Made by a program: the position numbers and the translations under genes. This document shows, piece by piece, positions 3,066 through 55,140 of a DNA stretch of 64,000 nucleotides. The notes beneath the pieces are model-generated. The model searched no databases. It was not told the origin of the DNA and worked only from the letters and a program-made list of their open reading frames with translations. The DNA is taken from positions 107,508,001-107,572,000 of the forward strand of contig NC_043001.1 of assembly GCF_006345805.1 (NCBI RefSeq), in the 5' to 3' direction. The DNA comes from Octopus sinensis. Taxonomy: Eukaryota. The stretch's first letter is position 1, and every line of letters starts with the position of its first letter.

Positions 3066-3422
3066 GGTGTATGTATATATTTATTATATGATACCTTAAT
3101 ACTGTGTGAACTAAGATCCCCTTTGACAGGCCGCTGGTATTTATAGAATGCTAAACAGTTTCGGTATGCAAATTAGGGACTCCTTCATAGAATAACTGCT
3201 GCATTTGCTGAGTATATTAACGGTTTGGCAGCTTCTTTCTCTGAAGAATGATGTAGACGCCTCTGACGAGAACCCAATAATGTCCGAAAACCGATTAAAG
3301 TGGTTCATCATTCTTTTTTGGTTAAAATTTGCCCTGTTTATAATTATACCATATGCCATATATACATACATACATACACACACACGCACTCACACACACA
3401 CACATATATATATATGCGTACA

Positions 3423-3618
3423 TTCTTTTATTTGTTTCAATCATTTGACTGTGGCCATGCTAGAGCACCGCTTTTAGTCGAGCTAGCGACCGTGCTTATT
3501 CTATCGGTTCCTTATGCCGCACTTTTATGTGACGGGGACGTAAGCACACCAGCATCTGTTGTCAAGTGATGTTGGGGAGACAAACACAGACACACAAACA
3601 TACATACACACGCGCATG

Positions 3619-3651
<33 letters not shown>

Positions 3652-3653
3652 TA

Positions 3654-3693
<40 letters not shown>

Positions 3694-3857
3694 GACGGGC
3701 TTCTTTCAGTTTCCGTCTACCGAATCCACTCACAGGCTTTGGTCGGCCTGTGACTATTGTAGTAGAAGACACGTTCCCAAGGTGCCACGCAGTGGGACTG
3801 AACCCAGAACCCTGTGGTTGGTAAGCAAGCTACTTACCACACAGCCACTCCTGTGCC
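3423..3857 (-). mobile_element. tRNA-headed SINE family S1, near full length, internal (TA)n expansion at about 3600-3692
   Basis: Head aggagtggctgtgtggtaag..., core gtggcaccttgggaacgtgtctt, tail ggtgctctagcatggccacagtcaaatgattgaaac; matches other copies in the window. Confidence 0.85.
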
Positions 3858-4279
3858 TACATAGTAATTTCTGTTCCATACTTAACGTGTGTACACCGTT
3901 AATAGTCATGATACTGCAGTTTCCGTCCAAGATATGATCTCTTACACACGTGATGTGTTAAAAACACAATATACATTGGATGGGGACGAAAACGGGTAAA
4001 GAGAACGCCATATGCATTGCTGCCTGTTTAGGCCTTGTCAATAAGGCTTACTCACAGTCATATACTTCTACGAAATTTGTCACCTCCAATATGCTGGAAA
4101 ATATGACTAATGCGTTCACTGATGTTGCGAATAGATGCCGGATTGAATAAAATCACAGTGTATGCAATTGAAGCAGCATCAAATTAAAATAGCCATCTAC
4201 GTATCATTCTAAACGTATATACACCGTCGACAGAAGAATACTGAAGTTTTTATCCGAGATAAAATCTCTTGTAGTCATT

Positions 4280-4480
4280 GGTTTCAAATTTTGCCTCAAG
4301 GCCAGCAGTTTTAAAGGTGTAGGTCTATCACATCGACCAAAGTGTTCAACTGCTCCTTATTTTATTGACTCCGAAAGGATGAAAGGCTATGTCAGCCCCG
4401 TCACGAATTGAACCCAGAATGTAAAAACGGAGAAAATGTTTCTAAGCCGTTTGCTCGGTGTGCTAACGATTTAACCAGTA
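4280..4480 (-). mobile_element. Degenerate SINE family S2, tail-2 variant (ggccttg-type end)
   Basis: Body ttgactccgaaaggatgaaaggc matches the S2 copies. Confidence 0.6.
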
Positions 4481-5138
4481 AGCCGCCACAACAACACAGT
4501 ACAGATCAGAGGAAATTGTGTGGGGTATTTGGCTCCTATTTCTAGGAAGTGGAATTAAAAATAGAAGCTCCCTCTTAGTGAAGGAGTGAATGTCAATGAT
4601 GAATGAAATTTTCGTTAAGGCGACAAGTGTATTACTCCTGTCACTTGTGTATACATTGTGGGGCAACCAGTGAAGTCTGAAGAAGGAAAAGTATGAACAT
4701 CACATAATCTCAAAGCTGTCTCCTTTAAGTTAAAGTCATGTCTTTAAATTCATTATCAAAATATTACCCTTTATAAGCTTCTCCATTATAAATGCCTGTA
4801 TGTGTGTGTTGTGTAGAATAAGTTGGTGAACTAAATACGAGATGGATCAATAAGTAGATAGCGATAGATAAAGAGAAAGAGGGAGGAGGGAGAGAGAGAG
4901 GACTTGAAGGTAAGAGTGTGGGGAGTTTATTGGGGATTTCGTGAACCGATAGATGAAGTCACACAAGTCTCAGCTGGCACACGATCAGGCTACGGTTAAA
5001 TTTAAACAACCATCTGCAGAAATGTAACAGGTGTTGTTATTGTGAATATCTAAAGAATATTCGATAATATGTGAGTGGATGTTGAAACGATGGAAATTAT
5101 AAATGCACACCCGTTCATATAGAAATGGATAGATGTAA

Positions 5139-5204
<66 letters not shown>

Positions 5205-5207
<3 letters not shown>

Positions 5208-6301
5208 AGATATAGCAAGGTACTAGCCGTAGATAGAAATAGAGTAGATGGTGAGTTAGTTAAGAAGTTAGAAGAGGCAATAAGAAGCGGCATCACATCC
5301 GACGTTTTAGAGGCGAGGTTGGCCCTTGACCAACACTTCAACGCCAAACACGAAGGGTGTGCTGTCAGAGCTAGGATGCGTGCTCTAAGGATGGAAGGTG
5401 TTGGAGCCGCGAGAGAGACCCGGGTGGCGGAGGCACAGCAGAGCAACAAAGCCACCAGTCGGTCTCTGGTAGATGAACAAGGGCGCGAATTGCTCGAGCC
5501 TAGCAAGATGTGCGAGACATTTCAGCGGCACTTTGCCCGACTGTACGGGACGAGTGGTGAGCGTGAACGCAGGGTGGACTTCAGTGCCTACCTGCACAGC
5601 CTACCACGACTCTCGGCAAGAGAGGCAGAGTGCTGCGAAGGTGCCATCACGGCGGCGGATGTGCGGGACGCGATGGCAGAATGCTTGAGAGACAAATAAC
5701 CGGGTTTGGATGGTCTGCCCTACAAGTTTTACAATTGTATGCCAGACTTGTTTGGAGACGTCTTGGCAGCGGTATACTGCAACTGGCAGCAAAACGGGAG
5801 CATACCCGGTTTTGTGAGTCGAGGAGCCGTAACGCTGCTGAAGAAAGATCCAAACAAGGGGAACATTATAGATAACATTAGACCAATCACTCTGCTCAAT
5901 GCAGACCTGAAAAGTTTGACAAAGGTGTTAGCCAAGAGGTTGACGCTTGTCATCGAGAAACTGGTCGACAACGCACAAACGTGCGCCGTGCCGGGCCGGA
6001 GCATACATGACAACCTCCATCTGATGCGCTACATCATAGACAGAGTAGTTAAGGAACCTGACATGGGTGGGGCCCTGATCAACTTGGATCAATCGAAAGC
6101 CTTCGATAAGGTAGACCATCGATACTTGAAGGCAGTCCTGAGAGCGGCTGGTTTCGGTCCCGTCTTCCGCGGCTGGATAGCTGCCTTGTACAGAGGCATC
6201 CGTTCGGTAATTCGCGTAAATGGACATCTATCGAGACCTTTCGACATTGCACGTTCGGTCCGTCAGGGATGCCCCCTCTCGGCGCTTCTATACGTATTGA
6301 C

Positions 6302-6302
<1 letters not shown>
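5205..6302 (+). mobile_element. Tx1/L1-type non-LTR retrotransposon ORF2 internal fragment (linker + N-terminal RT), copy A, truncated at both ends and embedded in (TCTA)n
   Basis: ORFs 5319-5699 and 5706-6635 give [22 protein letters not shown] and [11 protein letters not shown] motifs; premature TAA at 5697-5699 where copy B has TCA; collinear with 24407-25505. Confidence 0.93.
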
Positions 6303-6389
<87 letters not shown>

Positions 6390-6427
6390 CCTGTCTGTCT
6401 GTCTGTCTATCTATTTATTTATCTATA

Positions 6428-6479
<52 letters not shown>

Positions 6480-6908
6480 ATCTATCTATCTATTTATATA
6501 TATATGTATGTATACATGTATGTATATAATTACACACAAATATGTGTTTGTGTATGTATTGCGAATATTACGTGTATGCGTGTATACGCACTCGTTAGAT
6601 TGGTTCACAAATTTTCAAACTTAAGCGAACATTGATAGCCATCGTTTCTGAATTCATTTTAGTCGATTTTTGAACTACCATCCAATTTACATTTACCTAC
6701 TTTTTTATTTCCTTGCTCAACAACTCAATAAAATGCTTTTTACATTCTTTTACAACCCTGGAATGTTCTTCTTCTTCACGTCAAACCGAATTATTTCAGT
6801 TTTCAAGTGTTTGCTACTTATATTCTGATAACCAACATTAATAGTTTTGTTCTCATCCTACTGTTTTCCGCTTTTCGTCTTTTCCTCGCTGAAGCAATTT
6901 CGCAGCGG

Positions 6909-9747: not shown

Positions 9748-9932
9748 AGGCGGCGAGCTTGCAGAATAGTTCTGAATTCAAATTCCGCCGAGGTCGATTT
9801 TACATTTCATCCTTTCGGGGTCGATTAAATAAGTACCAGTTGCGCACTGGGGGCGCTGTAATCGATTTAAACCTTTTGTGTGTCCACTTTTGTCCCCTCT
9901 ATGTTTAGCCCCCTGTGGCCAATAAAGAAATA
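9748..9932 (+). mobile_element. SINE family S2, tail-1 (ends gccccctgtggccaataaagaaata), internally deleted
   Basis: Head ggcggcgagcttgcagaa, body ttcaaattccgccgaggtcga...aagtaccagtt, AATAAA at 9921-9926. Confidence 0.85.
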
Positions 9933-9969
9933 TATATATATATATGTATATGTTTATGTATACATACAT

Positions 9970-12360: not shown

Positions 12361-12591
12361 TATTTCTTTATTACCCACAAGGGGCTAAACATAGAAGGGA
12401 CAAACAAGGACAGACAAACGGATTAAGTCGATTACATCGACCCCAGTGCGTAACTGGTACTTAATTTATCGACCCCGAAAGGATGAAAAGCAAAGTCGAC
12501 CTCGGAGGAATTTGAACTCAAAACGTAACAGCAGACGAAATACCGCTAAGCATATCGCCCGGCGTGCTAACGTTTCTGCCAGCTCGCCGCC
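12361..12591 (-). mobile_element. S2 SINE, tail-1, full length
   Basis: Complete head-body-tail; ends agccccttgtgggtaataaagaaata. Confidence 0.9.
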
Positions 12592-12610
12592 TTCATAATA
12601 TAATATTTTT

Positions 12611-12872
12611 ATTTCCTTATTGCCCACAGGGGGTTAAACATAGAGAGGACAAACAAGGACAGACAAAGGGATTAAGTCGATTACATCGACCCCAGTGCGT
12701 AACTGGTTCTCATTTAATCGACCCCAGTGCGTAACTGGTACTTGTTTAACCGATTCCCGAAAGATGAAAGGCAAAGTTGACCTCGGCCGAATTTGAACTC
12801 AGAGCTTAAAGACAGACGAAATACCGCTGAGCATTTCGCCCGGCGTGCTAACGTTTCTACCAGCTCGCCGCC
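12611..12872 (-). mobile_element. S2 SINE, tail-1, full length, flanked by the 15-bp direct repeat ttcataatataatat
   Basis: Direct repeat at 12592-12606 and 12873-12887; internal duplication of atcgaccccagtgcgtaactgg. Confidence 0.88.
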
Positions 12873-23818: not shown

Positions 23819-23879
<61 letters not shown>

Positions 23880-23918
23880 GTCTGTCTATCTGTCTGACTG
23901 TCTATCTATCTATCTATC

Positions 23919-23952
23919 GTGTGCAGCCCTGTGTGGCTAATAAAGAAACATA
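23919..23952 (+). mobile_element. 34-bp solo 3' terminus of the Tx1-type LINE inside a (TCTA)n/(TCTG)n array
   Basis: gtgtgcagccctgtgtggctaataaagaaacata is identical to 27305-27338. Confidence 0.88.
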
Positions 23953-23963
23953 TCTATCTATCT

Positions 23964-24040
<77 letters not shown>

Positions 24041-24071
24041 CTGTCTGTCTGTCTGTCTGTCTGTCTGACTG

Positions 24072-24122
<51 letters not shown>

Positions 24123-24169
24123 GTCTGTCTGTCTGTCTGACTGTCTATCTATCTATCTATCTATCTATA

Positions 24170-24252
<83 letters not shown>

Positions 24253-27200
24253 TTAGGGTCCCGGATACTGGAAACTAAACGCGTCTTTCCCATCGAGACA
24301 GGTTTTCAGAGACCGGATTAGCACACTAGTAAAGAGGGCTTTGACGGGAGCCATCATCAACAACAAATGGTGGTTTGCCCTCAAGAGAGCAGTAAAAGCA
24401 GAAGCGATTAGGTACAGCAAAGCACTAGCCATAGATAGAAATAGAGTAGAGGGTGAGCTAGTTAAGAAGCTAGAAGAGGCAATTAGAAGCAGCATCGCAT
24501 CCGACGTTTTGGCGGCGAGGTTGGCCCTCGACCAACACTTCAACGCCAAACACGAAGGATGTGCTGTCAGAGCTAGGATGCGTGCTCTAAGGAACGAAGG
24601 TGTTGGAGCCGCGAGAGAGGCCCGGGTGGCAGAGGCGCAACAGGGCAACAAAGCCACCATTCGGTCCATGGTAGATGAACAGGGGCGCGAATTGCTCGAG
24701 CCAAGTAAAATGTGTGAGGCCTTTCAGCAGCATTTTGCCCGACTGTTCGGAACGAGTGGAGGGCAAGAACGTAGGGTGGACTTCAGTGCCTACCTACATA
24801 GCCTAACACGACTCTCGACAAGAAAGGCAGGGTGCTGCGAAGGTGCCATCACGGCGGCGGAAGTGCAGGAAGCGATGGCAGAATGCTCGGGGGACAAATC
24901 ACCGGGTTTGGATGGTCTACCCTACGAGCTTTACAATTGTATGCCAGACTGTTTGGAGATCTCTTGGCGGCGGTGTACTGCAACTGGCAGCAAAACGGGA
25001 GCATTCCTGGTTTTGTGAGCCGAGGAGCCGTAACACTGCTGAAGAAAGATCTAAACAAGGGAAATGTAATAGATAACTTTAGGCCCATCACTCTGCTTAA
25101 TGCAGACTTGAAAATTTTGGCCAAGGTGCTAGCCAAGAGGTTGGCGCTTGTCATCGAGAAACTGGTCGACAGGGCGCAAACATGCGCCGTGCCAGGCCGG
25201 ACCATCCATGACAACCTCCACCTGATGCGCTACATCATAGACAGGGTAGTTAACGAACCTGGCATGGGTGGGGCGCTGATCAATTTGGATCAATCGAAAG
25301 CTTTCGAAAGGGTGGACCATCGATACTTGGAGGCGGTCCTCGGAGCGGCTGGCTTCGGTCCCGTCTTCCGCGGCTGGATAGCCGCTTTGTACAGAGGCAT
25401 CCGTTCGGTAATTCGCGTGAATGGACATCTATCGAGACCCTTCGACATCGCACGTTCGGTCCGTCAGGGATGCCCCCTCTCGTCGCTTCTATACGTATTG
25501 ACTCTCGAGCCATTATTGCGGAAGCTGGCAACCTTGAGATGCATCCCGCGAGAACTGGGATGCGGGACGAGCGTGTCTGCATACGCGGACGACGTCACCG
25601 TCATAGTGTCTAGCGACGAGCACATCGAGCAGGTCGGCGAGACACTGAAAAACTACGAAGCGGTGACAGGAGCGAAAATCAACCGGGAAAAGTCAGTGGG
25701 CTTGCGACTAGGTACCTGGAGAAGCAAGCCCATGCCGTCCACCAGCGCCTCCGTCGGGACGCTGGACCGAGGCCCGGTTGAGTTGCTCGGGGTCTGGTTT
25801 GGTCCGGACCTCCAAGTGGAGAAGAACTGGAACGAGATAACGAGTAGGTGGTGGTCACTCTCGCCCGGCAATGGGCCGAGAGGAAACTGTCCCTAAAAGG
25901 TCGGGCGGAGGTGGCGAACACGTACATCGCGTCCGTCATCTACTACCGCCTGACCGTCGTACCTTGTCCCGACCCTACCATCACCAAACTACAACGCATT
26001 CTCTTTCGCTTCTTGTGGAAAGGATGCGTCCCGATGGTCAGGCGATCCATTTGCTGTCAACACCCGTTAAAAGGAGGGCTGGGCATGCCGTGGTTGATGA
26101 TGCGCAGACACGCGCTGAGACTGCGACATCTCTGGCTCTATGTAGACGACGGTGAACAGGTGTGGTCGCCGTTTGTGAGGCACGCTTTCCCGCAGCTCGT
26201 CTCCATGACCGAACTGCAGTCGTGGATCAAAAAGAGCCGAAGAAGGGCGAATGGCACCGCGAGTGTCGCGTTGCTCTCAAGCAACTCTGCCGTCCTGGGT
26301 CGCCTTGAGTGACTTCAACACAACCAAAGCATTCTATAGGGGTTTAGTGGAGGGGAGGTACGACGACGAGCTCGGGGCGAACCTGGACGTCGACGAGGAG
26401 TACCTGACCCGCCTGTTCAGGACGACTTTCGGCCAGGGCCCATGGACAACTTCCAGAGATCCCTGGCCTGACAGTGCTACGAGAAGCGCTACCCGTTCGG
26501 GATAAGCTCTACAGACACGGCTCGAGAAACACGGGCCGACCTGCCCGAGATGCGGTCAGAGCGACGAAACCGTTCTGCACGCACTCGTGCAGTGTCCAAC
26601 AATTTCCGACCTGTGGGCTTGTGTCGAACAACTGCTGTCACGTGTGGGACGAGTCGGTTTATCAGCTAAGTCTATCGTTAATATTGTCACGCCTCCCTCC
26701 TTCAAACGGGAAGGAAGAGCTATTTTCATCATCCTTGTGCTATGGCGAAAGAATGTATCGGTGGACGCGTCTGAAAGGATTGGAGACAAACACTTTCCTC
26801 TCTGGTCAATCTCTCATCAACTTCTTCAAGTACCACTTGAAAAGGAAAGTGAGAGTAGAGAGGCAAGTTTTGTCTAGCGAATGTTTTAAAAAAAGATGGG
26901 TGAATGTAGCAAGAATGGCACGTATGAATGACGAAGCCACCTTGAGCATGATCCTATGAACCCAGAAATTGAAAACAGAGAGTTGCTTATTTGCAAAAAA
27001 AAAAAGAAGAAATATAACATGTGACTCCATTGACCGAGGTTACCGTGGTCTTTTCCGTAGGCTTTTCTTTCCACGGGTAAACCTCACCTGTCCTCCCCTT
27101 TACACTTCATATTGACAATTCTGTGATAACGATCCCTATTGATCATTTTTTTTTTCCTCTCCCCCTTTTTTTTTAACCCCCCTTTTTTTTGTCCTCTTTC

Positions 27201-27338
27201 TCTCCTTTTACGATCCCTTTTGATCGAAACTCCCCCTTCCTTTTTTTTTCTTTTTTTTTTTAAACCTTCAAAAGAAAAGCTCTACCTTGTAATTTGTTCT
27301 ATCTGTGTGCAGCCCTGTGTGGCTAATAAAGAAACATA
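24253..27338 (+). mobile_element. Tx1/L1-type non-LTR retrotransposon, copy B: 5'-truncated ORF2 (post-endonuclease linker, RT, C-terminal CCHC) plus 3' UTR, frameshifted
   Basis: PGYWKLNAS at the 5' end; RT motifs [29 protein letters not shown]; CPRC-x8-H-x4-C at about 26540-26600 across frames; pyrimidine-rich 3' UTR; (TCTA/TCTG)n on both sides. Confidence 0.95.
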
Positions 27339-27342
27339 TCTA

Positions 27343-27373
<31 letters not shown>

Positions 27374-27864
27374 GTCTGTTTGTCAGTCTGTCTATCTATC
27401 TATCTCTTCCTAAATATCTCTCATTTTCTCCACATTTCTCTATACCTTTTTCTCTATCTATCTGTCTGTCAGTCTGTATGTATGTATAGCTGTCTATCTA
27501 TATATCTATTTACACGCGCGTGCGCACACACACGCACACATATATATCTTGATATTGGTTGCTTAAAAGGGTTATACTCCAAACTGTATCCTCGTGACAT
27601 ACATCTCCTCATGTATATATGTCGATGCTTTATTTTAAACGAGTCATCCATGCTTGTTAAATCATAATATTTGCAGAATAAGAATATATTAAAACAAAGA
27701 AATTTTGGCATAGTTTTGATTCCATGTTTACACGAGTTTCGTTACAGTATTGGAAATAAGAATATGAATATCATTATTAATTATAACAGTGGTATATATT
27801 TATAATAGTTATATAGAAACCATATAAAGGATTTCCAAAACTGTGATTCCTCAGACAAGATATA

Positions 27865-30049: not shown

Positions 30050-30390
30050 AATGACCCTAGTACGTAACTGGTACTTAATTTATCGATCACGAAAGGATGA
30101 AAGGCAAAGTCGACCTCGGCCGAATTTGAACTCAGAACGTAACGGCAGACGAAATACCTATTTCTTTACTACGCACAAGGTGCTAAACACAGAGGGGACG
30201 AACTAGGACAGACAAACGGATTAAGTCGATTATATCGACCCCAGTGCGTAACTGGTATTTATTTAATCGACCCCGAAAGGATGAAAGGCGGAGTCGACCT
30301 CGGCGGAATTTGAACTCAGAACGTAACGGCTGACGAAATACGCCTACGGATTTCACCAGGCGTGCTAACGATTCTGCCAGCTCGCCGCCA
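30050..30390 (-). mobile_element. S2 SINE tail-1 (30159-30390) fused to a headless second S2 body (30050-30158)
   Basis: Junction gacgaaatacc|tatttcttta, also seen at 12360 and 41815. Confidence 0.82.
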
Positions 30391-33144: not shown

Positions 33145-33375
33145 AGGCGAGCTGGAAGAAACGTTAGCACGCCGGGCGAAATTCGTAGCCGTATTTCGTC
33201 TGTCGTTGCGTTCCGGGTTCAAATTCCGCCGAGGTCGACTTTGCCTTTCATCCTTTCGGGGTCGATAAATTAAGTACCAGTTACGCACTGGGGTCGATGT
33301 AATCGACTTAATCCGTTTGTCTGTCCTTGTTTGTCCCCTCTTTGTTTAGCCCCTTGTGGGTAGTAAAAAAAAAAA
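33145..33375 (+). mobile_element. S2 SINE, tail-1, full length
   Basis: ggcgagctggaagaaacgttagcacgccgggcg...agccccttgtgggtagtaaaa. Confidence 0.88.
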
Positions 33376-34924: not shown

Positions 34925-37476
34925 GGTGAAACCCACTAATATGGGTAAAATTCCTTACTTAGGGACTTGAGCACAAGCAACCATGCAATATGCATAGCGC
35001 TGACTGAAACGCACCTGTCAAGCAGTATAGCAGATGCAGAAATACACATACCGAAGTATACTGTTTTTCGGTCGGACAGGAAGGAAAGAACTCATGGTGG
35101 GGTTGCCCTGTACGTCCGTGAAGATGTCACACCCATAGTACTGTTGACACACTCAAACTCAGTCTGTGACACACTGATAGTACACATGAAACACCGAAAA
35201 TAGTAATATGTGTCACATATCGGCCACCAGACACCCCCAGTCATGAAGGAGTGTTTGAAGATAGCCTCAGAAGAATAGAAGAAGTCCTGGACAAACTGGA
35301 CCAGGGTAACACCATTCTACTGCTGGGAGATTTTAACCTTCCGAAAGTCAAATGGCCAGATGGCCATCTCCTCCCTGGAATGACATCACTTGAACAGAGA
35401 CAGACAGAGTCCTTGTTGGCTCTCACACGCAAGTTTTTCATGGAGCAAGCAGTGCTTGGCCAACAAGAGGTGTGAATGTCTTGGACCTCTGTTTCACAAG
35501 CAACCCGATGCTCATCCACAACATAATGGTAACACCAACAATTCTCTCAGAACCACAACTTAGTAGAGGTAATGATATATGGTATGAGAGAGTTAGTTGA
35601 GACGCAGCCATTAGAAAATACCACAGGCCTATCCAGTTTAAACTTCCATAAGGCAAACTGGAAGAAGATCAACGAAGAGATCCGAAAACATGACTGGAGT
35701 AACTTCATCACCACACAAGACACCAACACACATTTCCAACATTTCATGACAACAATACAGAACATATGCCATAAGTTTGTCCCGGAGAAAAAAGCCAGCG
35801 GGCATAGGAACGTTATTCCCAGAGACAGGAAAATACTTATGAGGCGAAAAGCTAAGCTCTCGAAGCAACTGAATGCACGGCAGAGAAACAATGAGGGACT
35901 CCACCTGAAACTTTTTGAAACGGAAACTGCACTCAAACTTTCCTATGAGAAGGAGAGGGCAGAGAGAGAAGCCAGGGCCATAGAGAATATTAAAACAAAC
36001 CCTAAGCCTTCTTTAAATTTGCGAAAGAAACCACCTCGGTACACTGCAAGATTGGCCCACTCTTTGATAAAAAGGGCTCTCTAACTGAGGACCCCCAAGG
36101 GATAAGTGAAATACTAAAGGAACAGTATAAAAGTGTGTTCACATCCCCTCTGGGGCACATGCAAATCACAAACCCAGAATTTTTCTTTGATGCCACAACA
36201 CTCCAAAACCAAACAACAACCATCGACCACATAGAAATAACAGAGAGGGATGTAATATCTGCTATAGAAGAAATGAGAATAAACTCAGCTGCTGGACCAG
36301 ATGGATTCCCAGCAGTCCTCCTAAAAACATGCAGGCATGCCCTAGCGGGACCACTGAAGAAGCTCTTCAGTGGTTCCTTGGCTAACGGTAAACTGCCCAG
36401 GGCGCTAAAAGAAGGCACCATATGCCCTATCCACAAAGGAGGGAGTAGAGCAGAGGCCAAAAACTACAGGCCAGTCTCCCTGACGTCACACATAAGTAAG
36501 GTCATGGAACGAATCATCAGAAAAAAACTGATCACGTTCCTCGAAGAAACTAACCGTCTCACTGACACACAGCATGGCTTTCGCCCAGGAAGAAGCTGCC
36601 TTACGCAGCTATCACACTACGACTGGGTACTGAAACAACTACTGGATTGCTCACAGGTGGATGTGGTATATCTCGACTTTGCGAAGGCCTTTGACAAAGT
36701 CGACCACGGAGTGATATGTCACAAATTACTCAGACTCGGCATAACAGGAAAAGTAGGTGAGTGGATACATGACTTCCTGAAGGACAGAAGCCAGATGGTT
36801 GCAGCCAATGGAGCCCTCTCGGGAAAGACACCAATAGCAAGCGGGGTGCCACAGGGCACAGTCTTGGGACCCTTGCTGTTTTTGGTGGCGCTCTCTGACA
36901 TGCCCTTGGTAGCACAAACAACATCCCTCACTAGCTATGCTGATGACACAAAGGTAGCACAGGCAATCAAAAACCCAGCTGATGCTGACCTTTTACAAGA
37001 TCTGCATGCCATATACAAATGGGCTGAAGACAACAACATGCAATTTAATGCTGGTAAATTTCAAGCCTTACAATATCAAGCTGTAAACACATATACATTA
37101 CAACACAACTATACTGGTCCAGGAGGGATCGAAATCCCAGTATCGAAATCAATACAGGACCTGGGGATAGACATGAGTGACGATGCATCTTTTTCTTCAC
37201 ACATCGCGAAGGTGGCGACAATGTGCAGACGACTCACTGGCTGGATCCTGAGGACATTCCGGACAAGAGACTGCGAGACCATGTTGACACTATGGAGGAC
37301 ATTTGTCCTAAGCCGCCTGGACTACTGCTCCCAACTGTGGTCACCGCATAGTGTCAAACTAACCACAGAGCTTGAGACAATCCAAAGACATTTCACCAAG
37401 AGGATTTCCACCATGAAAGAAAAGAACTATTGGGAGAGGCTTAGGGAACTCAATTTGTACTCCTTGGAACGAAGAC
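34925..37476 (+). mobile_element. CR1-group LINE ORF2 (APE endonuclease + RT), several frameshifts, 3' end missing
   Basis: IALTETHL, FRSDR...GGVALYV and LLGDFNLP APE motifs; [34 protein letters not shown] and YADD RT motifs in the 482-aa ORF 36135-37583. Confidence 0.95.
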
Positions 37477-37890
37477 TTAATATCGGTTTCAGTGTGTGCC
37501 AATGGGAGAAAGTTCGAAAATCCATTTCAGATCTGAAAAGACATAAGGTAGTAAAAAAAAACAAAAGACCTTGTACAAATTGACCCGATCAATCAATACT
37601 GTGAAAGATTTATCTTTCGTCTGTCACCCACAATTCAAACTATGGACATCTATAGCAGGACCGAGTAGTCACCTTAGTGATCACGGGCAGACACCCAGAA
37701 ATGCCACCGACAAGGAGTAAGTACAGGCAGACGGCAAACATCTGCGTGGGCGGAGCAATTACCATATATGTATTTACATATCTGTAAATACAAACACACA
37801 CATGCATACACACACATACGTATAAAAATACATGATATATGTCTGTGCAGATATATACATGAAGATATATTATATATATATATATATATA

Positions 37891-47236: not shown

Positions 47237-47471
47237 TATTTCTTTACTGCACACAAGGGGCTACACACAGAGGGGACAAACAAGGACAGACAAATGGATT
47301 AAGTCGATTATATCGAACCCTGGGCGTAACAGGTACTTATTTAATCGACCTCGAAAGGATGAAAGGCAAAGTCGACCTCGGCGGAATTAGAGCTCAGAAC
47401 GTAGCGGCAGACGAAATACTGCCAAGTATTTCGCCCGGCGTGCTAACGCTTCAGCCAGCCCGCCGCCTTTT
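47237..47471 (-). mobile_element. S2 tail-1 SINE nested in an older S2 copy (47060-47505), 18-bp TSD
   Basis: cgacgtattaacgcttct at 47219-47236 and 47472-47489. Confidence 0.9.
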
Positions 47472-50234: not shown

Positions 50235-50361
50235 CTATTTCTTTACTACCCACAAGGGGCTAAACAGAGAGAGAAAGAGAGGACAAACAAGGACAGACAA
50301 ACGGATTAAGTCGATTACATCGACCTCAGTGCGTAACTGGTACTTAATTTATCGACCCCGA
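50235..50361 (-). mobile_element. S2 tail-1 SINE 3' half, broken by the hammerhead-containing repeat
   Basis: Tail and body match S2; ends abruptly at atcgaccccga. Confidence 0.8.
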
Positions 50362-51898: not shown

Positions 51899-51963
<65 letters not shown>

Positions 51964-52487
51964 ATGTATGTATACATTTGTCTACCAAATTCACTCACTG
52001 GTCAGAACGAAGCTATATAGTGCAAGACACTTAAGACATGGCGCACAATGAAATTGGACCTTTAACCGCACAGTTGCAAAACAAGCTTCTCAACCACACA
52101 GCTATGTTTCTAAAAAACATATAATTTTTAACTTCGTAAACTTGTCGACCATGAAAGCCGGAGAAAGAGGAATTATGTTGCTTTAAAAATTCGTTCTGTC
52201 AACTCATTAATAAAGACGCGGAGATGAAGAAACATTTCCAGTTATATTTCTTTGTGTGGGGAAACTGCCATTTTTCAGTTTGACAACCATAAATCAAGCA
52301 CATATAGCAGTTTATTTAAAGCAAAACACTAGACTGGGATTCGAGTGATATCTGGCTGCAACTTGTAGAAGGTTGGACGAATTCTATGTAAACGAAAAAG
52401 GTGTTTTGATACCTAGTGACAAGTCTCATGGATTTATAAATGAATATGATAAAATATTAAAATGGGTACAATGTGTTCAGTTGATTG

Positions 52488-53570
52488 ATGTTTCTTTATT
52501 ACCCACCTGGGGGCGACACAGAGGGGGACACCACAAGACATAGGGACATAGAACATTACAATTAAATTTATGAAAAATGAGTTATTACATGAAAATAATG
52601 ATAATATGAAAGCGATGCTAAAGGCCCCATCCGTTAGCATCACTTACCTGTCCTTTGGTTTTCACCGTCACTTGAATGTTCATTCCCAATACGAATACCT
52701 TCCATATCCATTCTTACTCCGAAATACTCCTGCATATTTTCCACGAATTCATCGCTCATTCTTATATCTTTCACCTCCCAATTCTCCCTTTCACACCTCA
52801 CCATAAACTCATCTATTCTCTTCTTTTCAATCACAGCATACCTAGTCTCACCAACTTCATACCATTTATACTCTTCCATTAGCCTTTTAACTTCTTTCTG
52901 TTCTGTCATAGTACAAATGTACGGCCTGGGTTCGATTTCAATCTCTTGTCTGTCTGTATTATTTTTTTTCTTTTGTTTTCTTGTTGGAGGGGAGCGGGTG
53001 GGTTCACTGTCTGCAGGGATAGGGTGGGTCTCAGAGGGTGTGGGTGGTGTTGGGGTGGATTGGTGTTCTATGTTATTTTCTTTTCCTCGTATTCTTCTCT
53101 TCCTCTTATTTCCAGCTTCTTTCCATTTCTGTGAATTCTCTTCTTCTACTGTCTCCTTCTCCTCTGGTTTCTGCTTCTCTCTCTGTGGTTCGGAATACAT
53201 TTCTTTCCCTGGGGGAGGGCAGAAGGCTCTTATGTGACCCCTCAGGCCACACTTGTAACAACGTGGAGCTCTGCCCTCCACCCACACTCTCATGATCACG
53301 TCTCCCAATCTGATGCTTTCCGCCAGGTCCACCAGTACCTCGTTCTCTGCCTGCACGTTCAGCTCCACTGTTACGCCTCTCCAGCCCTCGGTCTTAACCG
53401 AGGCATGGAGAATATCCACTTCCTCCTCGTGGCCGCTAATCACAGCCACCACAATCCACTCGGCCTCAACGTTTGGTGGCACTCCCTCCACCCTTACTCG
53501 TGTAATCCTTCTATTTAGATATGTAGGCAAAAGAGTTACCTTCTCGGATTTCACCGCCTTCGCCGCCATG
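52488..53570 (-). mobile_element. ORF1-only non-autonomous non-LTR retroelement (HAL1-like 'half-Tx1'), 1,083 bp, 16-bp TSD
   Basis: TSD tgtgttcagttgattg at 52472-52487 and 53571-53586; single ORF; 152-nt 3' UTR ending gcccccaggtgggtaataaagaaacat; no RT or endonuclease sequence. Confidence 0.85.
52640..53569 (-). CDS. Gag-like ORF1 protein (RRM-like N-terminal region, CX2CX4HX4C zinc knuckle, charged/Pro-rich linker), 309 aa, uninterrupted
   Basis: TRVRVEGVPP...VWVEGRAPRCYKCGLRGHIRAFC follows the Tx1/L1-type ORF1 pattern; no stops or frameshifts. Confidence 0.85.
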   Translation of the reverse strand: MAAKAVKSEKVTLLPTYLNRRITRVRVEGVPPNVEAEWIVVAVISGHEEEVDILHASVKTEGWRGVTVELNVQAENEVLVDLAESIRLGDVIMRVWVEGRAPRCYKCGLRGHIRAFCPPPGKEMYSEPQREKQKPEEKETVEEENSQKWKEAGNKRKRRIRGKENNIEHQSTPTPPTPSETHPIPADSEPTRSPPTRKQKKKNNTDRQEIEIEPRPYICTMTEQKEVKRLMEEYKWYEVGETRYAVIEKKRIDEFMVRCERENWEVKDIRMSDEFVENMQEYFGVRMDMEGIRIGNEHSSDGENQRTGK

Positions 53571-54089
53571 TGTGTTCAGTTGATTGTGGATTTCACCTTA
53601 AGAAAGATTGAGATTCAACCTTATGAAGAGTTGAAAAAATAGACAAAATACCTAGGTAACCCGTGAAAAAGGAAAAAAAAAGAAAGGAAAGACTATCAAA
53701 ATATGCATTCATTGTATGAAAAGGAAAAAAAAACTGTCTAAATGTTACCACTCGATTTCGGGGATCGAATGGGCATTGCGCCTCATTTTATACTCTTTCA
53801 TGTTACCATTCGTTTCTTTTAATTTTTTCTCTTCTTATTTCTTCTTTTTATAATTCTAAGTTCCCCGAGTTTATCTTTGTTTGTTTTGTATTTGTTCTAT
53901 TCTTTGTATAGTCCCTAGTGGATACTAAAGAGATAGATCACATACAGGCCCCTTCATTTGTTTGGTTTCGTCACTCATTGAAAGGTAAAGGTTATTAGGG
54001 AAGCTCACCGACCTGGTGGTAGATATTGGTCACCTGAATGAGGTAAACACATAACTAACGCTGCTCTATGATATTTCATTCTAACTTTG

Positions 54090-55140
54090 ACACAAGACCC
54101 ACGGTTTTAGGGGAGCGGCTAATTCGATTGCTTCGATACCAGTATCCAATTGTTACTTGTTTTATCCCTAAAGGATGATAGGCAAAACCGATGTGGGAGG
54201 CATTTGAACTCGGAACGTAAAGAGCCAGAAAACGCCAGCTGAGCGTTTTCCCTGATGCGTTTACGATTCTGCTAATCAATACGATAATAAACGTTTCTAC
54301 TATAGACACAAGGCTTGAAATTTTGGGAGTGGAGGAGGGTAGTGGATTATGTCGAAAGGGAGAAAAGGCAAAGCTGACCTTGGTGAAATTTGAAATCACA
54401 ACGCAAAGACGTACGCAACGCCATCAAGCATTTCGTTTGGCGTCTTAAGAATTCTGCAAGTTCACCATCTTAATGAATAATAAAACTAATAAAACTAGAA
54501 TATTTAAGATCCTGGAGAGAAAAGTTAGTGTAGCCGCATGCACCTCATGGTATCTTCATATTTTGACACAAGGCCAGCGATTTCGGGAGAGAGAGTAATC
54601 GATTACTCGACCCCAAGTATTTAACTAGGATTTATTTTGTCGACCCTGAAGCTATAAAAGACATAGTCGACCACTCTGAATTTGAACTCTAAACGTAAAG
54701 ACAGGCATGCTAGCTATTTTGGCAGATTTTTTTCTTTTCTACTCTAGGCACAAGGCCCGAAATTTTGTGGGAGGGACTCAGTCGATTAGATCGATACCAG
54801 TATGAAACAGGTACTTAATTCATCGGCCCCGACAGGATGAAAGGCAAAGTCGATTCGGTGGAATTTCAACTCAGAACGTAAAGACAAACGAAATTCTGCC
54901 AGCTCAACGCGTTGCTATTTTGGCAGATTGCCACTGTGATGAATATGAGAATAATAAAATGAAAAGAGCGACGAGAAAATATTTACGTTCTGAATTCCAA
55001 TTCCGCCGGGGCCAGCTTTGTCTTTGATCCTTTGAAGGTTGATAAAGTGAGTACCAGTTGAATACTGGTGTCGACTCAATCGACTTCTGCTCTCCCTTGT
55101 ACAATCGACTTACTCTCCCGCTGCCCCTTTGCCTCAATTT
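54090..55140. mobile_element. Cluster of about 5 degenerate S2 SINEs (mostly tail-2 variants), mixed orientation
   Basis: Repeated ggatgaaaggcaaagtcga / aatttgaactc(a/g)gaacgtaaag motifs. Confidence 0.65.

What the first reader, a model, noticed from the sequence alone, without database searches (positions are those of the whole stretch)
52472..53586. Intact ORF1-only 'half-LINE' with a perfect 16-bp target-site duplication
Seen: a 1,083-bp minus-strand insert is bracketed by TGTGTTCAGTTGATTG on both sides. It consists of 1 nt + a 930-bp stop-free ORF (309 aa, one canonical CX2CX4HX4C knuckle after an RRM-like segment) + a 152-nt UTR ending AATAAAGAAACAT, with no RT, endonuclease or poly(A). 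Known: vertebrate HAL1 elements are non-autonomous L1 derivatives encoding only ORF1p; 16-bp TSDs fit L1/Tx1-type TPRT. Inference: this is a recently inserted, probably 5'-truncated member of a cephalopod 'half-Tx1' family that keeps a gag-like RNA-binding protein and borrows RT in trans. It is the only retroelement ORF in the window with no disabling lesion.
Basis: partly seen in the sequence, partly recalled or inferred. Interest (0 to 1): 0.9.

Follow-up and report, generated by a model that had tools for sequence, protein, structure and literature searches.

The report
Truncated ORF1-only octopus retrotransposon copy
The insert is a real but dead-on-arrival, 5'-truncated copy of a 1.7-kb octopus jumping gene that encodes only an RNA-binding "ORF1" protein. 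It carries the same 3' tail as neighbouring LINEs and SINEs, so it most likely borrows their reverse transcriptase; this makes it a solid new example of a known kind of genomic parasite, not an intact element.

Summary
A 1,083-bp minus-strand insert (52488-53570) is flanked by a perfect 16-bp duplication. It carries a 309-aa ORF with one CCHC knuckle and a 152-nt 3'UTR ending AATAAAGAAACAT, with no RT, endonuclease or poly(A).

The ORF is not intact. Octopus vulgaris loci hold more than 25 copies of a 1.73-kb unit (5'UTR, ~470-aa ORF, same 3'UTR). The window copy is nt 664-1732 of that unit, and its ATG is internal Met164. It lacks the 5'UTR and most of the first of two RRM-like domains.

The family fits an ORF1-only "half-LINE":
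- no unit has an ORF2;
- 5' ends vary and 3' ends are fixed;
- TSDs are individual, 12-19 bp;
- dN/dS is 0.24-0.40;
- the ORF is 28-36% identical to ORF1 of APE+RT LINEs.

The last ~35 nt are shared with those LINEs (one at window 23952-27337) and with a SINE. There are 10 tail motifs in the window against 0 expected.

The RT is closest to L1 ORF2p and has a zf-RVT-like motif, so L1/Tx1 group is likely. Tx1-clade phylogeny could not be run. The family also forms head-to-tail arrays and reuses target sites.

The parts
53571..53586 (.). Target-site duplication, copy at the element's 5' side (CAATCAACTGAACACA on the element strand)
   Evidence: Exact 16-bp repeat, only two copies in the window, 0/100 shuffles; bases beyond it differ
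53570..53570 (-). One extra nucleotide (C) at the 5' junction; the family consensus has G here
   Evidence: other copies read ...AGGAAG|ATGGCG
52640..53569 (-). N-terminally truncated ORF (309 aa + stop) = residues 164-472 of the family's ~470-aa ORF1-like protein
   Evidence: upstream 50 nt of other copies are conserved and in frame (..KYGTVVVHFKSESAARK|MAAKAVKSE)
53276..53512 (-). Second RRM-like (beta-alpha-beta-beta-alpha-beta) domain, residues ~20-98
   Evidence: AF2 pLDDT >90. Foldseek top hits for this model are ferredoxin-like/RRM folds but weak. The homologue model gives tandem-RRM hits, E 3e-5
53219..53260 (-). CCHC zinc knuckle CYKCGLRGHIRAFC (residues 104-117)
   Evidence: C and G positions nearly invariant in 54-60 homologues
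52910..53212 (-). K/E/P-rich low-complexity linker (residues ~120-220), predicted disordered; frameshift hot spot in other copies
52643..52909 (-). Family-specific C-terminal domain (residues 221-309), small alpha/beta module. In frameshifted copies it survives as an 89-aa ORF that O. vulgaris annotation calls hypothetical proteins
   Evidence: shared only with the A' subfamily (54% id), not with LINE ORF1s
52488..52639 (-). 3'UTR (152 nt). Its last ~44 nt (52488-52531) are the conserved tail ...GTCCCCCTCTGTGTCGCCCCCAGGTGGGTAATAAAGAAACAT
52472..52487 (.). Target-site duplication, copy at the element's 3' side
23952..27337 (+). 5'-truncated, frameshifted RT-bearing LINE of the tail-sharing group (candidate source of RT in trans). 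It ends ...CAGCCCTGTGTGGCTAATAAAGAAACAT and lies in an (ATCT)n microsatellite
   Evidence: RVT_1; zf-RVT-like CPRCGQSDETVLHALVQC; 81% identical to the L001 LINE with ORF1+APE+RT; tail
23913..23951 (+). Solo 39-nt tail fragment of the same LINE (extreme 5' truncation) in the same microsatellite
12363..12593 (-). One full SINE copy (~231 nt) carrying the same 3' tail. Further tail-bearing SINE ends lie at 9908-9933(+), 12612-12634(-), 30161-30183(-), 33349-33371(+), 40077-(-), 47239-47261(-), 50238-50260(-)

Best explanation
Window 52488-53570 (minus strand) is a dead-on-arrival, 5'-truncated copy (nt 664-1732) of a ~1.73-kb non-autonomous non-LTR retrotransposon family, here called 'family A'.

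A full unit has three parts:
- a ~170-nt 5'UTR;
- one ORF of ~455-472 aa, a Type-I ORF1p-like protein. It has an acidic N-terminus, two tandem RRM-like domains, one CCHC knuckle, a disordered K/E/P-rich linker and a family-specific ~85-aa C-terminal domain;
- a ~150-nt 3'UTR.
No unit has an endonuclease or RT.

The last ~35 nt of the 3'UTR (..GTCCCCTCTGTGTyGCCCCnnGTGGGTAATAAAGAAAyA) also end autonomous APE+RT LINEs of the L1/Tx1 group and an abundant SINE.

Proposed cycle. The unit is transcribed and its ORF1p coats its own RNA. The ORF2p of a tail-sharing LINE recognises the tail and copies the RNA into a nicked target by target-primed reverse transcription. This makes 12-19-bp duplications and often stops early, which gives 5' truncations.

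Shown here: the anatomy, multiple copies, fixed 3' end, variable 5' ends, individual TSDs, ORF1 homology to LINE ORF1s, purifying selection, tail sharing, and an RNA-editing-like footprint in one copy.

Inferred: cis-binding by ORF1p, use of LINE ORF2p in trans, and which LINE subfamily serves as partner.

The window copy itself cannot propagate. It has no 5'UTR or promoter and lacks codons 1-163. It shows ~0.9% private change and a perfect TSD, so it is fairly young.
For: **Family and truncation**
- blastn of the insert and of a full-length reference against 7 O. vulgaris loci finds over 25 units at 88-96% identity. The window matches reference nt 664-1732.
- The 50 nt upstream of the window's ATG are conserved and in frame in three loci.
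- Intact 454-472-aa ORFs exist in L004, L003, L006 and L005. The window's Met is residue 164.

**TPRT hallmarks**
- Other copies start at nt 948, 1233, 1303, 1421 and ~1578, and all end at the same tail.
- TSDs differ between loci: 16 bp in the window, 19 bp in L001, 15/16 in L002, 18 bp in L006, at least 12 bp in L007, and 19 bp in O. sinensis L008.

**ORF1 homology**
- blastp of A against LINE ORF1s gives E=7e-37 (LINE D) and 3e-23 (LINE C). Each of these ORF1s is followed by APE (PF03372) and RT (PF00078).

**Selection**
- NG86 dN/dS is 0.24-0.40 between intact copies, excluding pairs with L005_1966, whose reading frame is locally shifted in the linker (0.49-0.70). Fisher tests on the three pairs window vs L004, L003 and L006 give p=1e-5 to 1e-7.

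**Tail sharing**
- The aligned 3' ends of A, B, LINE C, LINE D and SINE agree.
- There are 10 tail motifs in the window against 0 in 100 shuffles.

**RNA intermediate**
- In L004, 68 of 163 differences are sense-strand A>G, against 9 T>C. Of these, 57 cluster within 445 nt.

**Structure**
- (tandem RRM-like domains plus CCHC).

**Age**
- 8 private substitutions in 930 nt, 2 synonymous and 6 non-synonymous.
Against: - No experiment or transcript data show that the family is expressed or mobilised in trans.
- Tail similarity names a group of candidate partners (LINE C-type and D-type), not one partner.
- A's 5'UTR and ORF are only distantly related to those LINEs (28-36% aa identity, no 5'UTR similarity). 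It is therefore an old independent lineage, not a recent deletion derivative.
- The sampled loci were reached through annotated C-terminal ORFs. Copy number and the ratio of arrays to dispersed copies are therefore biased and unknown genome-wide.
- Much of the array growth is DNA-level duplication: a 3-unit higher-order repeat in L003, and L003 and L005 are paralogous loci.
- No conserved hairpin was found in the tail.
- The window's species is not established. The exact ORF is not on record.
Confidence: 0.85

Rival explanations
1. The insert is a complete, intact member of a short ORF1-only family whose unit really begins at the ATG.
For: The ORF is open for 309 codons and starts 1 nt from the insert's 5' end. 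An O. sinensis gene model (P0019) starts at the same Met.
Against: None of about 30 sampled copies starts at nt 664 except this one; full units start at nt 1-25. The upstream sequence is conserved and in frame. The O. sinensis genomic ORF also continues upstream of that Met. The conserved ORF1 core begins about 90 residues before the window's Met, and the first RRM-like domain would be cut.
Confidence: 0.03
2. It is a processed retrocopy of a host gene: a tandemly repeated host gene cluster encoding an RNA-binding protein, copied by LINE machinery.
For: The family sits largely in tandem arrays with a 1.73-kb period (L003, L005, L006). An AATAAA lies near the 3' end. The ORF is under purifying selection.
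Against: - There is no poly(A).
- The 3' end is a specific tail shared with LINEs and a SINE.
- The protein is homologous to ORF1 of APE+RT LINEs.
- Array junctions vary (start nt 4-109). A dimer is flanked by one 18-bp TSD, and one target sequence is reiterated between tandem copies.
- Most array units are frameshifted; only 4 of 19 full units are intact.
- Relatives were found only in Octopus and annotated as uncharacterised.
Confidence: 0.05
3. It is a one-off internal deletion of an ordinary ORF1+ORF2 LINE, not a family.
For: Tail-sharing LINEs with homologous ORF1s lie next to family-A units in L001 and L005.
Against: Over 25 units on several chromosomes share the same ORF-3'UTR junction. 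Distinct ORF1-only subfamilies exist in O. vulgaris and O. sinensis: A, A' (54% aa identity) and B (35%). In L005 the adjacent LINE D has its own TSD and is absent from the paralogous locus L003.
Confidence: 0.02
4. It is a fragment of the tandem array moved by a DNA-level process (ectopic repair or insertion of circular DNA), not by reverse transcription.
For: Arrays are abundant and partly grew by DNA duplication.
Against: The insert ends exactly at the family's 3' terminus, with the same terminal GAAACAT as the LINE in the window. It has a 16-bp TSD and a 5' end inside the unit, which is the TPRT pattern. Another copy carries a sense-strand A>G cluster, which points to an RNA intermediate.
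Confidence: 0.03

Closest known systems
HAL1 ('half-L1') of mammals
   Same: A non-autonomous LINE derivative that encodes only ORF1p and depends on ORF2p supplied in trans. It is multi-copy with TPRT hallmarks. HAL1 definition: PMC5753468, citing Smit 1999 and Bao & Jurka 2010.
   Different: HAL1 derives from L1 with a Type II ORF1p (coiled coil-RRM-CTD, Pfam Transposase_22) and ends in poly(A). This family has a Type I ORF1p (two RRM-like domains plus CCHC) and an extra family-specific C-terminal domain. It has no poly(A) and carries a specific ~35-nt tail shared with its LINE and a SINE. It also forms head-to-tail arrays.
HeT-A of Drosophila telomeres (from my own knowledge, not tested here)
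   Same: A gag/ORF1-only non-LTR element with CCHC knuckles that relies on RT from partner elements and accumulates in head-to-tail arrays.
   Different: HeT-A belongs to the Jockey clade, is telomere-specific and serves chromosome-end maintenance. The arrays here are chromosome-internal (for example 32.3 Mb of 118.9 Mb and 57.1 Mb of 100 Mb), and dispersed copies with TSDs exist.
Tx1-clade / L1-group LINEs with Type I ORF1p, including target-specific families such as Keno, Kibi and Koshi (Kojima & Fujiwara 2004, from memory; Type I/Tx1 link in PMC5203782; L1-Tx1 families active in O. vulgaris in PMC13282606)
   Same: The candidate partner LINEs have APE + RT + a C-terminal CX2CX8HX4C motif (weak zf-RVT) and an RRM+CCHC ORF1. 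One subfamily is flanked by (ATCT)n on both sides in the window and L001, and on the one end held in L005. Among solved structures the RT is nearest to L1 ORF2p.
   Different: Clade membership was not tested by phylogeny. The element under study has no ORF2 at all. The window copy is not in a microsatellite.
LINE/SINE pairs with shared 3' tails ('stringent' recognition, e.g. eel UnaL2/UnaSINE1; from my own knowledge; concept in PMC5786205)
   Same: A short conserved 3' tail is shared between autonomous LINE and non-autonomous passengers, with no poly(A) and with TSDs.
   Different: One of the passengers here is protein-coding (ORF1-only), not a small Pol III SINE. No conserved stem-loop was detected in the tail.
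ORF1-derived gene families (EKA/AVRk1 of Blumeria, PMC4641428; L1TD1 of mammals, PMC4161310)
   Same: ORF1-only coding units descended from LINE ORF1 and multiplied in the genome.
   Different: Those are host or pathogen genes with new functions. Here the units keep the LINE tail, TSDs and 5' truncations, so they still behave as transposons.

Membership tests
ORF1-only non-autonomous LINE derivative (HAL1-type, broad sense) | Encodes an ORF1p homologue and no ORF2 (no endonuclease or RT) in the full-length unit | tested here: met
   The 1.73-kb units hold a single ~470-aa ORF. blastp to LINE ORF1s gives E 3e-23 to 7e-37. Pfam finds no RT or APE.
ORF1-only non-autonomous LINE derivative (HAL1-type, broad sense) | Multi-copy with TPRT hallmarks: fixed 3' end, variable 5' truncation, individual TSDs | tested here: met
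ORF1-only non-autonomous LINE derivative (HAL1-type, broad sense) | Mobilised in trans by the ORF2p of an autonomous LINE | not testable with these tools
   Only indirect: a ~35-nt 3' tail shared with APE+RT LINEs and a SINE
HAL1 sensu stricto (L1-derived) | Type II ORF1p (Transposase_22: coiled coil-RRM-CTD) | tested here: not met
   No Transposase_22 hit. No L1 ORF1p among PDB sequence or fold hits. The architecture is two RRM-like domains plus CCHC.
HAL1 sensu stricto (L1-derived) | Poly(A) 3' end | tested here: not met
   The element ends ..AATAAAGAAACAT directly at the TSD. Other copies end at the same tail.
Type I ORF1p (Khazina & Weichenrieder classes, as summarised in PMC5203782) | At least one RRM plus a CCHC zinc knuckle | tested here: met
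   The CX2CX4HX4C motif is present. Pfam zf-CCHC is above cut-off in paralogue B (24.6 bits) and below it in A (14 bits). AF2 gives two beta-alpha-beta-beta-alpha-beta domains with tandem-RRM Foldseek hits, E 3e-5. RNA binding itself was not tested.
Tx1 clade (for the partner LINE, hence 'half-Tx1') | RT groups with Tx1 references in an RT phylogeny | not testable with these tools
   No reference clade sequences (Repbase/RTclass1) were available. Among solved structures the RT is nearest to human L1 ORF2p (E 1.7e-25) against R2 (7e-15). Source names of the homologues were uninformative.
Tx1 clade (for the partner LINE, hence 'half-Tx1') | APE + RT + C-terminal Cys/His zinc-binding motif in ORF2 | tested here: met
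   PF03372 and PF00078. CPRCG..H....C scores zf-RVT PF13966 at E 2.5e-4, below the cut-off. The nearest homologues carry PF13966 in precomputed Pfam.
Tx1 clade (for the partner LINE, hence 'half-Tx1') | Frequent sequence-specific targeting (repeats, microsatellites) | tested here: inconclusive
   LINE C-type copies are flanked by (ATCT)n on both sides in the window and L001, and on the single end held in L005; a solo tail lies in the same microsatellite. LINE D and family A use other sites. A, B and an O. sinensis relative hit the same position of a SINE head.
Processed pseudogene / retrocopy of a host gene | Parent intron-containing gene; poly(A) tail | tested here: not met
   No poly(A). Relatives are ORF1-like proteins of Octopus repeats only. 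The tail is shared with LINE and SINE.
HeT-A-like telomeric gag-only element | Head-to-tail arrays at chromosome ends | tested here: not met
   Arrays exist but lie at internal chromosome coordinates.

The most novel reading that the evidence does not exclude
Family A (with A' and B) may be a long-lived protein-coding 'parasite of a parasite' in octopods. Its own ORF1p, kept under purifying selection and fitted with a lineage-specific C-terminal domain, would package its RNA. A ~35-nt tail would capture the ORF2p of Tx1-like LINEs. Target-site reuse (the tail resembles preferred targets such as the SINE-head site GG^CAGAAACGT) would build head-to-tail arrays. Copies such as L004 would preserve footprints of ADAR hyperediting of the RNA intermediate, giving a genomic record of germline editing of transposon RNA in cephalopods.
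Probability: 0.3. Interest if true: 0.6.

Novelty: new member of a known kind. Interest (0 to 1): 0.42.

Why it matters
ORF1-only LINE derivatives are documented mainly in mammals (HAL1) and Drosophila (HeT-A). A cephalopod family with a Type I ORF1p shows that losing ORF2 while keeping a selected ORF1 has arisen again, in a LINE group that recognises a specific tail. The tail is shared with both a LINE and a SINE.

The family offers a natural test of what ORF1p contributes when RT is borrowed. It also explains a set of 'hypothetical proteins', and gene models fused to host genes, in the O. vulgaris annotation. The A>G-rich copy suggests that retrocopies can record RNA editing in an animal known for heavy editing.

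For the scan itself the lesson is practical. An open frame that starts at an insert's edge can be an accident of 5' truncation.

Tried and rejected
- **Pfam 'Ephrin' hit** (17 bits, below cut-off) on the C-terminal domain: treated as spurious.
- **PDB sequence search of the ORF**: found only retroviral and AIR2 CCHC knuckles at E of 0.1 or more, so it says nothing on family.
- **Foldseek of the truncated ORF model**: no hit at E<=1e-3, only generic ferredoxin-like/RRM folds. The full-length homologue model was needed.
- **Hairpin in the shared tail**: RNAalifold gave 2 pairs at -0.33 kcal/mol, so no structure is claimed.
- **Rfam (gathering) and ARAGORN on the window**: nothing found, so the SINE head is not a recognisable tRNA or snRNA. 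Rfam on the flank of the L005 array gave only low-complexity miRNA noise.
- **Exact look-up of the window ORF**: not on record, so the source species was not established.
- **Structure prediction of a full-length family-A ORF from L006/L004**: Homologue P0043 was used instead.
- **RT homologue search for clade names**: the hits are unnamed ENA/JGI proteins and only their Pfam content helped.
- **A truncation or transcription hot spot at Met164**, suggested by the O. sinensis gene model P0019: rejected, because the genomic ORF continues upstream.
- **A telomeric HeT-A-like role**: rejected on chromosome coordinates.
- **A as a recent deletion derivative of LINE C or D**: rejected. The 5'UTRs are unrelated and ORF1 identity is 28-36%.
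Full report
**1. The observation**

The 16-mer TGTGTTCAGTTGATTG occurs at 52472-52487 and 53571-53586 and nowhere else in the window, even with two mismatches. None of 100 dinucleotide-preserving shuffles gave two matches. The bases just outside the repeat differ, so the duplication is exactly 16 bp.

The 1,083 bp between the repeats read as follows on the minus strand:
- one extra C (53570);
- an ATG-initiated ORF of 309 codons plus stop (53569-52640);
- a 152-nt untranslated tail ending AATAAAGAAACAT, directly abutting the repeat.

The knuckle CYKCGLRGHIRAFC is residues 104-117. Pfam finds no RT or endonuclease and there is no poly(A). The insert is single-copy within the window. The description is therefore accurate.

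**2. It is a member of a family, and it is 5'-truncated inside the ORF**

A protein search returned only Octopus vulgaris 'hypothetical proteins'. All matched through the last ~85 residues, often in two or three tandem copies. I fetched the DNA around seven of them (L001-L007, assembly GCA_951406725.2, six chromosomes).

That DNA shows more than 25 copies at 88-96% identity to a 1,732-bp reference unit, L001 8675-10406. The window copy aligns to nt 664-1732 of that unit at 91.4%.

In three independent loci the 50 nt upstream of the window's ATG are conserved and in frame..KYGTVVVHFKSESAARK|MAAKAVKSE. Full units have a ~170-nt 5'UTR and an ORF starting MDYESL.... Intact versions of 454-472 aa exist in L004, L003, L006 and L005. 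The window's Met is residue 164 of the 472-aa form.

So the frame looks 'intact' only because reverse transcription, or 5' processing, stopped 1 nt before an internal in-frame ATG. No other sampled copy starts at that position. An O. sinensis gene model also starts at this Met (P0019), but it is an annotation choice, because the genomic ORF continues upstream.

**3. Retrotransposition hallmarks**

Other copies begin at unit nt 948, 1233, 1303, 1421 and ~1578. All run to the same 3' end..GGGTAATAAAGAAA.

Target-site duplications differ from locus to locus:

| Locus | Duplication | Length |
|---|---|---|
| window | CAATCAACTGAACACA | 16 bp |
| L001 | TAGAAATCTACCCACGTGT | 19 bp |
| L002 | CAGAAACGTCA[C/G]CAC | 15 of 16 |
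| L006 | GCCTTACTGCTTTCTGCT (flanks a dimer of two full units) | 18 bp |
| L007 | ~GTATGTGTACAT | at least 12 bp |
| O. sinensis L008 (related element) | CAGAAA[C/T]GTTAGCACGCCG | 19 bp |

One copy (L004) differs from the consensus by 68 sense-strand A>G changes out of 163 differences, against 9 T>C. Of the A>G changes, 57 lie within 445 nt. This is the pattern expected if an RNA intermediate was hyperedited by ADAR before being copied into DNA. It supports an RNA route independently of the TSDs.

**4. What the protein is**

The family-A ORF is homologous over ~210 residues to several other ORFs:
- the first ORF of LINE D (L005 12355-13308; 32% identity, E=7e-37);
- the first ORF of LINE C (L001 14832-16223; 28%, E=3e-23);
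- two further ORF1-only paralogues, A' (54%) and B (35%).

The LINE ORF1s are followed by ORF2s with APE (PF03372) and RT (PF00078).

AlphaFold2 on the window ORF, with a 55-sequence alignment, gave:
- pLDDT above 90 for residues 20-110, with a beta-alpha-beta-beta-alpha-beta(-beta) fold;
- then the knuckle;
- a disordered K/E/P-rich linker at 120-220;
- a small alpha/beta C-terminal module at pLDDT 60-75.

Foldseek on that model found nothing significant. A full-length homologue (P0043, O. bimaculoides) modelled with pLDDT above 90 as two tandem such domains plus CCHC and long helices. It matched tandem-RRM proteins (NONO/SFPQ, Hsh49, U2AF65, IMP3) with 37 hits at E<=1e-3.

The window ORF aligns from residue 118 of that homologue. 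It therefore lacks strands 1-3 and helix 1 of the first domain. The architecture is that of a Type I ORF1p (RRM plus CCHC; PMC5203782), not the L1/HAL1 Type II protein.

The C-terminal ~85-aa domain is specific to A and A'. Many units are frameshifted in the linker, and the domain then survives as an 89-aa ORF. That ORF is what the O. vulgaris annotation reports.

A full HMMER scan of 1.84 billion representatives found 188 relatives.

**5. Selection**

Between intact copies of different subfamilies, Nei-Gojobori dN/dS is 0.24-0.40. For example, window vs L004 gives dS 0.132, dN 0.032 and a ratio of 0.24. Pairs that include L005_1966 give higher ratios (0.49-0.70), because its reading frame is locally shifted in the linker. 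Fisher tests of synonymous against non-synonymous changes for the three pairs window vs L004, L003 and L006 give p=1e-5 to 1e-7. The protein therefore mattered for the lineages that gave rise to copies.

The window copy has only 8 private substitutions in 930 nt, 2 synonymous and 6 non-synonymous. This is roughly the neutral ratio and amounts to about 0.9%. Together with the perfect TSD it makes the copy fairly young. On the rough clock quoted in PMC13282606 (JC 0.065 is about 18 My) that is a few million years at most. This is an upper bound, because the subfamily is thinly sampled.

**6. Where the RT comes from**

The last ~35 nt of family A are shared by B, by LINE C-type copies, by LINE D and by a ~231-nt SINE. 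Tail-bearing SINE ends lie at seven places in the window, and one full copy was read at 12363-12593(-).

| Element | 3' end |
|---|---|
| Family A | ..GTCCCCCTCTGTGTCGCCCCCAGGTGGGTAATAAAGAAACAT |
| LINE C-type (window 23952-27337) | ..CAGCCCTGTGTGGCTAATAAAGAAACAT |
| LINE D | ..TGTTCGCCCCTTGTGGGTAATAATAAAACAAC |

The motif GCCCCNNGTGGGTAATAAAGAAA, with up to 3 mismatches, occurs 10 times in the window against 0 in 100 shuffles. No conserved hairpin was found, so the conservation is at the sequence level.

This is the classic signature of non-autonomous elements that ride on a LINE whose RT recognises a specific 3' end. I infer, but have not shown, that family A uses the ORF2p of these LINEs.

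**7. Is the partner 'Tx1'?**

Several results fit the L1/Tx1 group:
- The window LINE's RT is closest, among solved structures, to human L1 ORF2p (E 1.7e-25) and well ahead of R2 (7e-15).
- ORF2 ends with CPRCG(Q/R)..ETV.HA.V.C, a weak zf-RVT match (E 2.5e-4, below cut-off). The nearest database relatives carry PF13966.
- The ORF1 type fits what PMC5203782 describes for Tx1-like elements.
- A 2026 repeat annotation lists 13 recently active L1-Tx1 families in O. vulgaris (PMC13282606).
- LINE C-type copies lie in (ATCT)n. The microsatellite flanks both sides in the window and L001, and the one end held in L005. A solo 39-nt tail sits in the same microsatellite at 23913-23951. Target specificity is a frequent trait of the Tx1 clade (my own knowledge).

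Clade membership needs an RT phylogeny against reference elements, and I could not run one.

**8. Arrays and target reuse (beyond the finding)**

- Many units sit head to tail with a ~1.73-kb period: L003 has ten, L005 five, L006 two.
- Junction start points vary (unit nt 4-109). L003 has a three-unit higher-order period, which indicates later DNA-level duplication. L003 and L005 share both flanks and are paralogous loci.
- In L001 three tandem copies are each followed by the same 19-nt target sequence.
- In L002, A and B lie in tandem with the same target reiterated three times. That target is the head of a SINE at GG^CAGAAACGT...
- A related ORF1-only element in O. sinensis sits at the same position of a different SINE copy.
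- LINE D in L005 has TSD ATGGAGGAAA and lies 4 nt after an A' tail. L003 is its empty site.

I read this as preferred targets that are regenerated by each duplication and may resemble the tail. Arrays would grow by repeated hits and then by unequal exchange. This is inference.

**9. Rivals**

- *Host-gene retrocopy.* Contradicted by the lack of poly(A), the shared tail and the LINE-ORF1 homology.
- *One-off LINE deletion.* Contradicted by the copy census and by the deep subfamilies A, A' and B in two species.
- *DNA-level relocation of an array fragment.* Contradicted by the exact 3' terminus, the TSD and the RNA-editing footprint.
- *Truly intact short unit.* Contradicted as set out in section 2.

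**10. Verdict**

The headline 'intact' is wrong, because this copy is a truncated, promoter-less dead end. 'Tx1' is plausible but untested.

The family is a new member of a known kind (HAL1, HeT-A). Its points of moderate interest are:
- a Type I ORF1p with a private C-terminal domain kept under selection;
- a tail shared with both a LINE and a SINE;
- array formation and target reuse;
- an editing-like footprint.

No step had to be referred.

Noticed in passing
window 23819-27512 (LINE at 23952-27337, solo tail 23913-23951); L001 14086-20140; L005 1-1243: A tail-sharing APE+RT LINE subfamily lies in (ATCT)n: the microsatellite flanks both sides in the window and L001, and the one end held in L005. 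An extra 39-nt tail-only fragment sits in the same microsatellite, which suggests a microsatellite-targeting L1/Tx1-group LINE.
   Followed up: partly
L004 8711-10398 (alignment columns 230-674 of the unit): One full-length copy has 68 sense-strand A>G changes out of 163 differences (T>C only 9), and 57 of them lie in a 445-nt stretch. This looks like ADAR hyperediting of the RNA intermediate fixed by reverse transcription.
   Followed up: partly
L002 8587-12540; L008 (O. sinensis CM016880) 3420-5240; SINE reference copy window 12363-12593(-): Families A and B (O. vulgaris) and a related ORF1-only element (O. sinensis) inserted at the same position of the head of different copies of one SINE (GG^CAGAAACGTTAGCACGCCG). 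The 15-19-bp target is reiterated between tandem insertions, which suggests an insertion hot spot.
   Followed up: partly
L003 5235-22507; L005 1966-17255; L006 6950-10420; L001 7813-10425: Head-to-tail arrays of the 1.73-kb unit. L003 has a 3-unit higher-order period. A dimer in L006 is flanked by a single 18-bp TSD. Three tandem copies in L001 are each followed by the same 19-nt target. L003 and L005 are paralogous loci that differ by a LINE D insertion (TSD ATGGAGGAAA).
   Followed up: partly
O. vulgaris proteins P0001-P0016, P0020: The 89-aa C-terminal ORF left by linker frameshifts is annotated as many 'hypothetical proteins'. It is also fused in gene models to host genes (HAUS1-like, TP53RK, CFAP65-like). 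These are likely annotation artefacts or exonisations worth flagging.
   Followed up: no
window 5706-6635 (+) and 35572-37583 (+): Two further RT-bearing ORF fragments (RVT_1, 309 and 482 aa) from other LINE copies. Their clade and state were not examined.
   Followed up: no
window 54079-54930: A cluster of diverged ~180-290-bp direct repeats (TTCTA..GACACAAGGCC.., GGAGGCATTTGAACTCGGAACGTAAAGA) lies just 0.5 kb from the insert. It was not identified.
   Followed up: no
window 51900-51980: A long (TA)n/(TG)n microsatellite about 500 bp from the insertion site; probably irrelevant.
   Followed up: no
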